This document shows, in pieces, positions 1,073 through 4,000 of a stretch of 64,000 bases of DNA. The notes below the pieces were generated by a model. That model had not been told where the DNA came from. It was given only the letters and a program-made list of their open reading frames with translations, and ran no database searches. Every line of letters begins with the position of its first letter. The first letter of the stretch is position 1. Source of the stretch: Lepidodermella squamata (taxonomy: Eukaryota; Animalia; Gastrotricha); NCBI GenBank assembly GCA_047495785.1, contig JBLDXI010000051.1, positions 124,001 through 188,000 on the forward strand, in the 5' to 3' direction. The position numbers and the translations under genes are program-made.

Positions 1073-4000
1073 TTTCGGAATTCTTCAAAATACAGCTGAG
1101 CTTTCTCAAATGCCAAGTCGAAGCTAAATTCCGTCATATCTCTCTGACCCTGATATTTCATCACGGCCATTCCAGCCAGAATTATACTGACTTGATTGAT
1201 AAAGTCTTTCTCCGACTTGTCCGAAAAAATAACACTAGCCGCTGCGACTGCCGCGCGACCCCACAGATCGTTCAAAAGCTCCTTTGACTTACTGTTCAAC
1301 TTGCTGCCCGAACGGCCCTTGCCCTGACTGGCACGCAAGGGACCATCCTGGCGTCGCTCGTCCTGACTGGCACCCAAGCGACTGCTCGTTGACCCGCTAT
1401 TGCTAATCCTCGACACATCCATCGACGACTCTGCCTCGAATTCCGACTCAGACTCGGCCTCGGCTTCGACCTGCTCAACTACTGGTGCCTTCTTGCCAGC
1501 CTCTGCGGCCTTCTTCGCTGCATTGCGTTTCCGCCTTCGCACGTTCTTCCGTTGGCTTCTGCTCAACTGCGGTTTCGCTACTTGCTGACTCGAACCCTGG
1601 GCTGGCTTGCCCGCCCCCGACCCTTGTGCTTTGGGTCCTTCGGTGGTTGACGAGGCCACCGGTTTCTCCACACGCTTTTCAGCGCGTTTTTCCGCCTCAG
1701 CCTTGGCCTTTGCCCTGATCGCCTCTGCTTCCGCTAACTGCCTTCTCTTGTCTCTCGCTAAACCCTCTCTAACATACTGCACGTACGGACATCCGGCGTA
1801 GTTGGTGGTGTGTTTCTGCGTGCAGTTGCGACACCGCATCGCTTCACATACTTTCGCCTTCGCCGCTTCATCCGTCAGGCCTTGCTCAACGCAAGCCTTT
1901 TTCGCAATTACCACCGGGCAAGCTTCGTCGCCCCTGAAGTGCTCACCGCTACAATCGGGGCAGGTTATCGTCTGGCTACATGACGTCCAGGAGTGGCCAC
2001 TACCCTGGCACCGCTGGCAAATTTTCACCTGCGGGCTGTAGTCTTTGACTTGCAGCACTCTGCTCGTCAACGCAAAGAAGCCAATATAACCCTTACTCAA
2101 ATGAACGTCTGTTTCGTCCTTTGACTTGAACTCAATCAAATACGTGCTGTAGCCAGGCCTGCCCTGCTTCAGCTTAACTACGTAAACTGCCCCATACTTC
2201 TCCTTAAAATACTTGGCTACATCCTCAACAGGCGCCGACGACGGTATGTCGATGGCCTTCACCTTGCGTTCCTCCAGCTTGAAGTCCGCTTGAACCTTCG
2301 GCTTTTCACCTGATAGAGCCGCCGGAAGATGGGCGTTCGCGTTTGCCCCGAATGCCGGCCTTGCGGGATCTTTCCAAGACGGGCTCTCGAAGAAAGCTTT
2401 CATAGAAGCCTCGTCAGCAAAAACAATCTGCCAACCGCCTTTCGATTTCGGCAGCATCTTCACAACCCGGGCACTTGGTGCTATCCTGTGAACTTCTTGA
2501 TTCATGAGATACTCGCTATTGAATCGTTGGCCATCGATTCGATCCACCATCGCGCTCAACTTCCAATTAATCGTCGGTTTGCCTCGCCAGTTGCCTGGTT
2601 TGGTGCCGCCCTGGTTCGCCGTCTGAACCGGTGGCTGTCGACGATTCTTCGCCGTCACAGTGATGAATTCTCCTTGACCCTCTTGGCTACCTCGGCTATC
2701 TTCCTCTACTGTCTTCTTCTCTTTTCCTCTCGCCACCGGCTTCCTCGTCACAGTCATCCTCTCGGCTGCCGGTTTCGCACCATCAGTCTTCAAAAACTTC
2801 GCTGCGGTCATGTCTGACTCGGAAACCGAGGATTCCATGCCTGTAAAGTCGGGCGCGTCGCTAAGTTTCACATACTTGCCATCATCACCGGCACGACGCT
2901 TTCGCTCACTGGTCGCGCCTTTCACCGAGCCTTGATCCATCGGCTTGTCTTCACTAGCCGTCAAATCTTGCGTCATGTCCATAACTTCACCTTGGTCCAA
3001 CTGCCGTTCGACCGTATCACCAGCGTCTTCATCTTCCCATTCTGCTCGATTTCTATCCTCTTCTGCTCTCTGTCTCTCTTCGTTCTCATCTCGTCCGGCA
3101 CCACCGCGCAACCGAAGAACCTCGAACAAGTTCGACCTTTCTACGGACTCGCTACGCCTGACTTTATCCCTTAGATCAATTTTGCTATCATTTTTGTCAT
3201 TTTTCACTTGATTTTTTACAAGTTCGCGTTCACCTGGGTGAACAACAAACAGGAAACAAAAATGGCCAAGCGACATGACCATGTCACAAACCACATCACA
3301 AACAACCATCAAAAGTCGATTCCTTACAACAGCGGTCGCGAGAAGCGCCGCACCACTGAGGAAAACAACAGTGCATACCATCTTCCACAAAATCGCTCTA
3401 GCAGCGCTATCAAGTATACCCGCGCTGTACTGCGGGGCGTAAAAGCAGCTCCAAATAGAGAGAAATTCATGAGAGAATGCTAAGTCGCGGGAAATGCATC
3501 GTCCGCTAGGAGCGGTTTCTACTACTACTGTCGCCGCAGAAGGCTTCGGCAGTAACGACGGTCCCGAACACACCGAGCCAACAATGTCTAAGTCAACACT
3601 ATCAATTCCGCTAGGAGCGGTTACTACTAGAGCCGCCGCAGAAGGCTTCGGCAGTAACGGCAATCTAACAAAAGCGTCACCGTTCATCAAAGCAGAAGGC
3701 CCTGATGAACGAGCAAAATCAAAAGCAACTATCACACTATCGGACCGCGTTCCGCTAGGAGCGGTTACTACAACTGTCGCCGCAGAAGGCTTCGGCAGTA
3801 ACGACGGTCCCGAACACACCGAGCCAACAATGTCTAAGTCAACACTATCAATTCCGCTAGGAGCGGTTACTACTAGAGCCGCCGCAGAAGGCTTCGGCAG
3901 TAACGGCAATCTAACAAAAGCGTCACCGTTCACCAGAGCAGAAGGACCTGATGAACGGGCAAAATCAAAAGCAAATTCGGATCCACAAAGCCCAAAATAA

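What the first reader, a model, noticed from the sequence alone, without database searches (positions are those of the whole stretch)
3100..3129. Ubiquitin C-terminus mimic (VLRLRGG) inside retrotransposon ORF1: a candidate host-deubiquitinase cleavage site
Seen: E1 ORF1 has LFEVLRLRGG at aa 1215-1224, preceded by SN. It lies at the boundary between a hydrophobic leader and the acidic/disordered start of the gag-like region. E3 ORF1 has LHQVLRLRGG at the equivalent boundary, although the leaders are unrelated. Known: ubiquitin ends STLHLVLRLRGG and DUBs cut after GG; cytopathic pestiviruses use inserted ubiquitin as a processing signal; some non-LTR elements use 2A-like peptides. Inference: these LINEs make a leader-Gag polyprotein that is split by host DUBs, or expose a free GG end for conjugation. 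I do not know this as an established feature of LINE ORF1s.
Basis: partly seen in the sequence, partly recalled or inferred. Interest (0 to 1): 0.9.

Follow-up and report, generated by a model that had tools for sequence, protein, structure and literature searches.

The report
Ubiquitin-tail motif in LINE ORF1
Two jumping genes in the ribosomal-DNA spacer, and six distant relatives elsewhere, keep an exact copy of the last residues of ubiquitin between a throw-away leader and their RNA-binding protein, most likely so that a host ubiquitin protease cuts the leader off; no paper I could search describes this.

Summary
VLRLRGG lies in frame on the minus strand at 3100-3120 (E1, aa 1218-1224 of a 1904-aa ORF1) and at 60937-60957 (E3).

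It is not chance.
- The two ORF1 cores are only about 27% identical, yet the seven codons differ at four synonymous sites and at no replacement site.
- An exhaustive profile search found six more distant ORF1 families with L-x-x-VLRLRGG at the same place.
- It is the longest invariant run of the whole protein.
- All eight families have an in-frame leader that starts at an AUG (12-1217 aa, mostly unrelated). Four relatives without the motif have stops just upstream of their start codon.

The E1 leader (3.6 kb) has no stop in the ORF1 frame only. Its amino-acid sequence evolves almost neutrally.

No ubiquitin fold precedes the motif, and the elements encode no protease and no 2A peptide.

Best reading (about 0.5): a linear ubiquitin-tail mimic, cut after GG by a host ubiquitin-tail protease, releases ORF1p from a translated leader. 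Cleavage itself is untested, and most deubiquitinases need folded ubiquitin.

The scan noted the same motif before on other pieces of this genome (s1-373970 and four others). I found no paper on it. I class it as a new variant of a known kind.

The parts
3100..3120 (-). E1 core motif VLRLRGG (aa 1218-1224 of ORF1); proposed cut after the second G, at 3100/3099
   Evidence: invariant in every E1 copy fetched and in 8 ORF1 families
3121..3135 (-). E1 extended motif SNLFE, matching ubiquitin positions 65-69; the L at ubiquitin position 67 is invariant in all 8 families
3136..6771 (-). E1 translated leader (about 1212 aa before the extended motif). It is hydrophobic and built of in-frame tandem repeats (951, 246, 153 and 12 nt). 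It has no stop in the ORF1 frame only.
   Evidence: 0 stops against about 90 in each other frame; repeat periods; dN/dS 0.7-0.8, not significantly below 1
6772..6876 (-). E1 5' UTR (105 nt). The element's 5' junction with the rDNA spacer is at 6876/6877. There is no AUG inside the element before 6771.
1057..3099 (-). E1 ORF1p proper, downstream of the motif: acidic disordered linker, RRM-like block, three Cys/His knuckles (core about 1711-2550) and a C-terminal helical part; the stop codon is included
   Evidence: dN/dS 0.28-0.38
2..1084 (-). Start of E1 ORF2 (AP endonuclease domain), cut off by the window edge
60937..60957 (-). E3 core motif VLRLRGG, with LHQ just before it at 60958-60966
60958..61365 (-). 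E3 leader, 136 aa from the first in-frame AUG at 61365, unrelated to the E1 leader
61366..61860 (-). E3 5' UTR. The element's 5' end is at 61860. The UTR holds a single out-of-frame AUG, a 5-codon upstream ORF.
59239..60936 (-). E3 ORF1p proper, downstream of the motif (linker, RRM-like block, CCHC knuckles, C-terminal part)
56475..59252 (-). E3 ORF2: AP endonuclease plus reverse transcriptase, with no protease domain
27509..29848 (-). Contrast: ORF1 of E2 (element 23834-30353) at the same spacer site. It has no leader and no motif, and there are stops just upstream of its ATG.

Best explanation
E1 and E3 are APE-type non-LTR retrotransposons. Their first ORF is translated from the first AUG as a fusion of three parts: a dispensable leader, an 11-residue copy of the ubiquitin C-terminal strand and tail (x-L-x-x-V-L-R-L-R-G-G), and the ORF1 RNA-binding protein. 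The peptide works as a linear, fold-independent mimic of the ubiquitin tail. A host cysteine protease that reads the ubiquitin tail cuts after GG and releases ORF1p, which then starts with a small residue (A, G, S or M). This lets the element carry a long translated 5' region, up to 3.6 kb in E1 and probably promoter or regulatory DNA, without burying the ORF1 start behind upstream AUGs. Candidate proteases are a ZUFSP-type or UCH/USP-type deubiquitinase. Shown here: the peptide is translated, selected, conserved and linked to leaders, and there is no ubiquitin fold and no element-encoded protease. Inferred: the cleavage, the identity of the protease and the purpose of the leader.
For: 1. The motif is exact in E1 and E3, and the codons differ only at synonymous sites.
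2. Six more ORF1 families from other samples carry L-x-x-VLRLRGG upstream of the same core. Where DNA is held, all codon differences are synonymous.
3. It is the longest invariant run in an 8-family alignment with 21-35% pairwise identity.
4. All 8 families have an in-frame leader that starts at an AUG, 12-1217 aa long and mostly unrelated. P0001, P0007, P0012 and E2 lack the motif, and all four have stops just upstream of their ATG.
5. The E1 leader has 0 stops in the ORF1 frame against about 90 in each other frame. Its repeat periods are multiples of 3, and the indels seen inside it in other runs are 3 and 951 nt. The two 1-nt indels seen lie in the 5' UTR.
6. The leader protein evolves almost neutrally (dN/dS 0.7-0.8, not significant), while ORF1p is constrained (0.28-0.38, P<1e-5), so the leader is disposable.
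7. The residue after GG is A, G, G, S, S, A, G or M, never P.
8. The first AUG of E1 and the first long-ORF AUG of E3 open the leader frame.
9. A eukaryotic DUB family cleaves the bare RLRGG peptide efficiently (PMC8776766). The host has two C78-family peptidase genes and two intronless UCH genes.
10. Complex prediction of the host UCH-L3-like protein with the E3 tail segment gave weak support: score 0.39 against a best control of 0.00. Runs agreed in at least 55% of contacts, and partner pLDDT was at least 41. The mark was reached by 51 of 78 solved complexes and 2 of 108 mismatched pairs. At 0.60 or under, only 5 of those 78 solved complexes passed, as did all 4 mismatches that passed. The result may come from the model's memory of ubiquitin-UCH structures.
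Against: There is no experimental or proteomic evidence of cleavage. No ubiquitin fold lies upstream: Pfam found none at E<=10, a ubiquitin HMM aligns only ubiquitin positions 63/66-76, and the AlphaFold2 models show no beta-grasp, though their confidence is low. [quoted passage not shown] One family (P0006) has only a 12-aa leader, which seems hardly worth removing, so the motif may do more than remove a leader. No RNA run was available to show the transcript start or to exclude splicing of the leader. Whether either host C78 peptidase is of the ZUFSP type rather than the UFSP type could not be determined.
Confidence: 0.5

Rival explanations
1. The motif is a docking motif that is not cut. 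The ubiquitin-tail mimic stays in ORF1p and binds a ubiquitin-tail-reading protein, such as a DUB active-site cleft. This would recruit or block that protein, for example to protect the LINE RNP from ubiquitin-dependent degradation.
For: The conservation and selection fit any protein-level function. P0006 keeps the motif with only a 12-aa leader. The tail segment docks weakly on a host UCH in silico (0.39 against 0.00).
Against: This does not explain why the motif occurs only where an in-frame leader exists and always exactly at the leader/ORF1p boundary. It does not explain why the leader protein is almost unconstrained. It does not explain why the residue after GG is always small.
Confidence: 0.2
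2. The site is a cleavage site, but the cutter is not a ubiquitin-specific DUB. It could be another host LXGG-type cysteine protease, or the cut could serve to free a leader ending in -LRLRGG that is itself used or conjugated.
For: Viral papain-like proteases cut linear LXGG sites in polyproteins (established knowledge; RLRGG-AMC reactivity of PLpro is cited in PMC8776766). No ubiquitin fold is present.
Against: The elements encode no protease. Conservation extends to V70 and L67 of ubiquitin, beyond LXGG, which points to a reader of the true ubiquitin tail. Conjugation needs the ubiquitin body for E1 activation (established knowledge). The leaders are unrelated and nearly neutral.
Confidence: 0.12
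3. The motif is an inert relic of an anciently captured ubiquitin gene fragment and has no present function.
For: The match to ubiquitin covers 10-14 residues, including the L and H of the last strand, so capture from ubiquitin mRNA is a plausible origin.
Against: The 7 residues are invariant across 8 families whose flanks cannot be aligned, and the only changes are synonymous. A relic would have decayed like its surroundings.
Confidence: 0.03
4. The leader and motif are not translated. Translation starts at a Met downstream, or the leader is spliced out, and the conservation reflects a DNA or RNA element.
For: No RNA or ribosome data were available. Synonymous divergence in the E1 leader is lower than in ORF1p, which hints at a nucleotide-level constraint there.
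Against: All variation in the motif is at third codon positions, with many different codons. There are 1217 stop-free codons in one frame only. Indels in the leader keep the frame. The first AUGs open this frame.
Confidence: 0.03

Closest known systems
2A-like 'ribosome skipping' peptides in the N-terminal region of APE-type non-LTR retrotransposon ORFs (L1Tc, Ingi, CR1, Crack, L2A; PMC3708506, PMC3894237)
   Same: Both are short conserved peptides near the N-terminus of a LINE ORF that separate an upstream product from the functional protein. Both are found in several clades.
   Different: The chemistry is unrelated: 2A has D-x-E-x-NPG|P and acts on the ribosome. No NPG(P) occurs in these ORFs. 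Here the peptide copies the ubiquitin tail and would need a host protease. Neither paper mentions ubiquitin.
Natural ubiquitin fusions processed by host DUBs (polyubiquitin, ubiquitin-ribosomal protein fusions), and ubiquitin inserted in cytopathic pestivirus polyproteins (established knowledge)
   Same: The cut is after ...LRLRGG, a host enzyme does the work, and the downstream protein is released with a new N-terminus.
   Different: Those carry the whole 76-residue beta-grasp domain. Here only about 11 residues of it are present, and no fold is detectable.
LXGG cleavage sites of viral papain-like or DUB-like proteases (coronavirus PLpro, arterivirus PLP2 and similar; established knowledge)
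   Same: Both are linear ubiquitin-tail-like sites inside a polyprotein, cut without a ubiquitin body.
   Different: Those viruses encode their own protease. These LINEs encode only ORF1p and APE-RT. The LINE motif copies ubiquitin further back, to V70 and L67.
ZUFSP/ZUP1 deubiquitinases (PMC8776766)
   Same: This is a eukaryotic enzyme class with high activity on the bare RLRGG peptide, so it is a plausible reader of such a site.
   Different: It is a candidate enzyme, not a homologue of the motif. No natural linear substrate of this kind is described in that paper. The host's two C78 genes were not classified.

Membership tests
Ubiquitin / ubiquitin-like domain (beta-grasp, PF00240) | A domain of about 76 residues with the beta-grasp fold, detectable by profile | tested here: not met
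   No Pfam hit at E<=10 on seven pre-motif segments, and none at E<=0.1 on the whole leaders. A ubiquitin HMM aligns only ubiquitin positions 63/66-76. Leaders can be as short as 12 or 47 aa.
Ubiquitin / ubiquitin-like domain (beta-grasp, PF00240) | Predicted 3D fold with a mixed sheet and a helix before the tail | tested here: inconclusive
   AlphaFold2 single-sequence models gave pLDDT 38.5 for E3 with no fold, and pLDDT 57.9 for E1, all helical. No beta-grasp appears, but confidence is low.
Ubiquitin C-terminal tail (L71-R-L-R-G-G76) | Exact LRLRGG, with V70 and L67 in register | tested here: met
   L-x-x-VLRLRGG is invariant in 8 families.
APE-type non-LTR retrotransposon (LINE) | ORF2 with AP endonuclease and reverse transcriptase; ORF1 with an RNA-binding core; target-site duplication at the insertion | tested here: met
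   Pfam Exo_endo_phos and RVT_1 in E3, E2 and L064 ORF2 (in L068 the RT match is partial because ORF2 is cut by the contig end), and the endonuclease in the E1 ORF2 start. ORF1 cores with Cys/His knuckles. Duplications of 15 and 6 bp at the spacer site.
2A-like recoding peptide | D(V/I)ExNPG|P at the boundary | tested here: not met
   No NPG or NPGP in any ORF1 or ORF2 examined.
Viral-type self-processed polyprotein (LXGG plus own papain-like protease) | A cysteine protease domain encoded by the element | tested here: not met
   Pfam finds only APE and RT in the ORF2s and no protease in ORF1 or the leaders. The full E1 ORF2 was not seen.
DUB-processed ubiquitin fusion | GG-dependent cleavage by a deubiquitinase | not testable with these tools
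   The only in-silico result is weak: UCH-L3-like protein with the tail segment scored 0.39 against a control of 0.00.

The most novel reading that the evidence does not exclude
A bare 11-residue ubiquitin tail, without the ubiquitin fold, is enough for a host deubiquitinase to cut a nascent polyprotein in vivo. A clade of LINEs that target a spliced-leader-like gene uses this as a portable module. The module lets them translate straight through kilobase-long 5' promoter or leader DNA and then discard the product. It may move between families together with 5' ends.
Probability: 0.4. Interest if true: 0.85.

Novelty: new variant of a known kind. Interest (0 to 1): 0.78.

Why it matters
If the cut is real, this would be the first retrotransposon I know of that borrows the host ubiquitin-processing machinery through a minimal linear mimic. 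It would be a functional counterpart of the 2A peptides of other LINEs and of the LXGG sites of viral polyproteins.

It would also identify a natural in-vivo linear substrate for a deubiquitinase that tolerates bare peptides. That runs against the general rule that DUBs need a folded ubiquitin.

It would explain how a LINE can hold a very long 5' region full of AUGs and still express ORF1p.

It would offer a compact 11-residue cleavage tag for animal cells.

The hypothesis can be tested directly with a GG-to-AA reporter and N-terminal mapping.

Tried and rejected
- **Word-indexed protein searches.** Searches with E1 ORF1 and E3 ORF1 returned nothing. The 8000 candidates were probably swamped by low-complexity words, so the blanks are uninformative.
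- **Metagenome scans.** With A1, 352 pattern matches were found but no ORF1 relative.
- **RNA evidence.** No RNA run is on record. Laying the two holders gave only contigs, so neither the transcript start nor splicing could be judged.
- **Structure prediction of the pre-motif regions.** Confidence was low and no beta-grasp appeared.
- **Complex prediction (UCH-L3-like protein with the E3 tail segment).** Support was weak: 0.39 against 0.00. The mark was reached by 51 of 78 solved complexes and 2 of 108 mismatches, and such low passes are more often wrong than right. The result may come from memory of ubiquitin-UCH structures.
- **Apparent ubiquitin-like residues further upstream** (ELVKNQVK in E1, GDPPEA in E3). 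I rejected these as evidence of a decayed ubiquitin because the HMM does not extend beyond ubiquitin position 63.
- **A 5' element shared between these LINEs and the foreign contigs.** blastn found nothing.
- **Helitron-like VLRLRGG** (L051-L054). It lies inside a conserved Rep domain and not at a boundary, so I treated it as unrelated.

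Full report
**Setting.** The window is a ribosomal-DNA array with SSU, 5.8S and LSU genes on the plus strand and a 5S gene on the minus strand in each spacer.
- Comparison with an uninterrupted spacer (14320-16471) shows three insertions at practically one spacer position, all on the minus strand. E1 runs from beyond the window start to 6876, E2 is 23834-30353, and E3 is 56148-61860.
- E2 and E3 have target duplications of 15 and 6 bp.
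- All three are APE-type non-LTR retrotransposons. The ORF2s of E2 and E3 carry an AP endonuclease and a reverse transcriptase, and only the endonuclease start of E1's ORF2 lies in the window. No other domain was found.
- The genome is 121 Mb in 151 contigs. Earlier notes of this scan call it an animal; I did not verify that.

- The minus strand of 3100-3129 reads LFEVLRLRGG, preceded by SN. These are aa 1215-1224 of the 1904-aa ORF at 1057-6771.
- The only other VLRLRGG in the six-frame translation of the window is in E3, at 60937-60957 (LHQVLRLRGG), inside the ORF at 59239-61386.
- The two ORF1 proteins align only over the RRM-like/Cys-His-knuckle core, at 27-28% identity. The leaders and the linkers after the motif do not align.
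- The seven codons are GTT CTT CGG TTG CGC GGT GGT in E1 and GTT CTT CGC CTA CGA GGT GGA in E3. That is four synonymous differences and no replacement.

**The motif in the rest of the genome.**
- The degenerate codon pattern for VLRLRGG matches 65 times, against 11 for the reversed control.
- The matches are two polyubiquitin genes, a ubiquitin-L40 fusion, two or three ubiquitin-like genes, four Helitron-like Rep genes, about five VLRF/VFRL-type variants in short ORFs, two relaxed variants, about 36 E1-family copies and 3 E3 copies.
- In the Helitron-like genes the string lies inside a conserved domain, so I treat it as unrelated.
- All fetched E1 copies, which fall into subfamilies 88-100% identical in ORF1p, keep SKIDLxDKVRRSESVERSNLFEVLRLRGGAGRDENEERQRAEE unchanged.

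**Conservation outside this genome.** A profile of the E1 and E3 ORF1 region was run with HMMER against 1.84 billion representative proteins.
- It found 22 proteins at E<=1e-10. Six relatives carry the motif at the same place, upstream of the same core: five of them among those 22, and P0018 at E=1.4e-18, which is also within that set. They are P0003 (NLHDVLRLRGG), P0004 (NLHLVLRLRGG), P0006 (NLHHVLRLRGG), P0009 (SLDDVLRLRGG), P0010 (NLLEVLRLRGG) and P0018 (DLNDVLRLRGG).
- They come from at least five different samples. Where the contig could be read, each lies 5' of an ORF2, which Pfam confirms as APE-RT for P0003 and P0006.
- In the four contigs with DNA, the motif codons differ from E1, from E3 and from each other only at synonymous positions.
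- In an alignment of the eight families (pairwise identity 21-35%, one pair 58%), L-x-x-VLRLRGG supplies 8 of the 35 invariant columns. Its 7-residue run is the longest invariant run of the whole protein; the next longest has 3 residues.
- My rough estimate from amino-acid frequencies gives about 1e-8 per position, so about 0.001 occurrences would be expected in the 150 listed proteins. Six were seen.

**Link with a translated leader.**
- In all eight families an in-frame AUG precedes the motif. Leaders are 12, 47, 84, 93, 117, 136-143, 149 and 1217 aa long. They are unrelated to each other, except for the sister families P0003 and P0004.
- Four relatives lack the motif: P0001, P0007, P0012 and E2 of this window. 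In each, stops in all frames lie just upstream of the ORF1 ATG, and there is no VLRLRGG-like string anywhere on the three foreign contigs.
- On a maximum-likelihood tree of 25 ORF1 proteins, the motif families are scattered. Well-supported branches force at least 3 gains or losses. E1 groups with the motif-less P0001 and P0002. The motif has therefore been lost repeatedly, gained repeatedly, or moved with 5' modules.
- The near-identity of SNLFEVLRLRGGAG (E1) and SNLLEVLRLRGGGG (P0010) in different ORF1 clades fits module exchange, but it is only a hint.

**The E1 leader is translated but disposable.**
- Between 6825 and 1059 the ORF1 frame has no stop, while the two other frames have about 90 stops each across the leader.
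- The element's 5' end is at 6876, and the first AUG inside it is the ORF's AUG at 6771.
- The leader consists of tandem repeats with periods of 951, 246, 153 and 12 nt, all multiples of three.
- Copies differ in leader length. Among copies not cut short, the open frames are 1547-1921 aa, and all remain open.
- In two other public data sets, the indels seen inside the leader are 3 and 951 nt. The two 1-nt indels seen lie in the 5' UTR.
- Between E1 subfamilies, dN/dS of the leader is 0.67-0.82, which is not distinguishable from neutrality (P=0.2-0.4). Downstream of the motif it is 0.28-0.38 (P<1e-5).
- Synonymous divergence in the leader is 2-7 times lower than in ORF1p. This suggests a nucleotide-level constraint (promoter or RNA) or recent exchange of 5' ends.
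- In E3, the 950 nt up to the motif hold only 7 ATGs, 5 of them in the ORF1 frame. The other two open ORFs of 5 and 9 codons.
- Under cap-dependent scanning, the motif is therefore translated in both elements.

**Is there a ubiquitin fold? No evidence for one.**
- Pfam finds no ubiquitin domain in the whole leaders at E<=0.1, nor in seven pre-motif segments at E<=10.
- A ubiquitin HMM built from this genome's own ubiquitin and ubiquitin-like sequences, run with all filters off, aligns only ubiquitin positions 63/66-76.
- Two leaders are too short to hold a domain.
- Position 69, which faces the core in ubiquitin, is polar or acidic in seven of the eight families.
- The AlphaFold2 single-sequence models are of low confidence (pLDDT 38.5 and 57.9) and show no beta-grasp.
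- The feature is therefore a linear mimic of the last strand and tail of ubiquitin.
- The elements have no 2A motif and no protease domain.

**Mechanism.** The pattern is what one expects of a cleavage site between a throw-away leader and ORF1p.
- The motif sits exactly at the boundary.
- It is present only where a leader exists.
- The residue after GG is always small (A, G, G, S, S, A, G, M).
- The leader is unconstrained.

The obvious cutter is a host enzyme that reads the ubiquitin tail. [quoted passage not shown] UCH-L3 and PLpro cut RLRGG-AMC orders of magnitude less well than ubiquitin-AMC (PMC8776766). The same paper shows that ZUFSP-family DUBs from animals, plants and fungi cut the bare RLRGG peptide very efficiently, so a peptide-competent host enzyme is not far-fetched.
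- The host genome holds two C78-family peptidase genes, but I could not tell UFSP from ZUFSP.
- It also holds two intronless UCH genes.
- A complex prediction of the UCH-L3-like protein with a 46-residue E3 segment gave weak support: score 0.39 against a best control of 0.00. The mark was reached by 51 of 78 solved complexes and 2 of 108 mismatches. Passes at 0.60 or under are more often wrong than right, and the result may reflect memory of ubiquitin-UCH structures.

I put GG-dependent cleavage by a host ubiquitin-tail protease at about 0.5. A non-cleaved docking role gets about 0.2, and another protease or another use of the cut about 0.12. A relic or a nucleic-acid explanation is very unlikely.

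**What is known.** Full-text searches found no paper that holds both 'retrotransposon' and 'LRLRGG'. No paper in the top listed results of the broader searches described a ubiquitin tail in a LINE ORF1. The two papers on 2A peptides in non-LTR elements do not mention ubiquitin. The closest known things are:
- the 2A peptides of LINEs;
- whole-ubiquitin fusions processed by host DUBs, including the pestivirus insertions;
- the LXGG sites of viral polyproteins, which are cut by virus-encoded DUB-like proteases.

This case differs from all three. It has only the tail, no fold and no protease of its own.

**Earlier notes of the scan.**
- The same motif was noted on other pieces of this genome (s1-373970, with a follow-up that reached the same reading, and s1-398071, s1-401947, s1-431047, s1-394194). 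I read these after my own searches; they agree with my result.
- Note s1-422642 says the spacer target is a spliced-leader-like gene. I saw that E2 and E3 are inserted 4 nt after a ...AAATTTTCTGAG|GTTAGT junction, and E1 28 nt after it. Three foreign contigs begin with similar ...TTTTGAG|GTTTGT strings.

**Limits.**
- There is no RNA, ribosome or protein evidence.
- Other LINE families of this genome and the C78 genes could not be fetched.
- The leader/motif association rests on 8 against 4 families that are not all independent.
- The taxa of the foreign samples are unknown.

Noticed in passing
window 15336-15420 (minus strand); junctions at 6876/6877, 30353/30354 and 61860/61861: The three LINEs are inserted 4 nt (E2, E3) or 28 nt (E1) after a ...GGTAAATATCTGCGATTGAATATTAAATTTTCTGAG|GTTAGT junction. 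It looks like the exon/donor boundary of a spliced-leader RNA gene lying next to the antisense 5S gene. Contigs L068-L070 from other samples start with similar ...TTTTGAG|GTTTGT strings.
   Followed up: partly
window 3130-6771 (minus strand): Synonymous divergence between E1 subfamilies is 2-7 times lower in the leader than in ORF1p, while dN/dS is near 1. This points to a constraint on the DNA or RNA (an internal promoter?) or to recent exchange of 5' ends between subfamilies.
   Followed up: partly
window 3502-3974, 4315-4707, 4530-5482: All tandem repeats inside the E1 leader have periods that are multiples of three (246, 153, 12 and 951 nt). Copies differ by whole repeat units, so length changes keep the reading frame.
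   Followed up: yes
E1 3100-3141 compared with P0010 aa 43-56: SNLFEVLRLRGGAG (E1) and SNLLEVLRLRGGGG (P0010) are nearly identical, although the two ORF1 cores sit in different clades of the tree. The motif may travel with exchangeable 5' modules.
   Followed up: no
L051-L054 (G000 C4:2800894, C11:691377, C9:2215229, C32:3896162): Helitron-like Rep/helicase ORFs contain DIVLRLRGG inside a conserved domain. I read this as unrelated to the LINE motif.
   Followed up: partly
L056 (G000 C55:172301); L057/L058 (C2:880578, C135:9678): L056 is a large ORF ending in a divergent ubiquitin-like domain (…STISLVLRLRGG) with a 25-aa extension. L057 and L058 are two copies of a divergent ubiquitin-like gene ending VLRFRGG.
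   Followed up: no
window 60958-61900 (minus strand): The E3 5' region holds only 7 ATGs in about 950 nt, 5 of them in the ORF1 frame. This looks like depletion of out-of-frame start codons.
   Followed up: partly
L071:1480-2178; G000 C3:4298814-4299419: There are two intronless UCH (peptidase C12) genes. One is a complete 232-aa UCH-L3-like protein.
   Followed up: partly
window 30128-30353 and the E3 5' end near 61635-61860: The 226-bp head shared by E2 and E3, noted earlier by the scan, is absent from the intact spacer. It therefore belongs to the elements and not to the target.
   Followed up: partly
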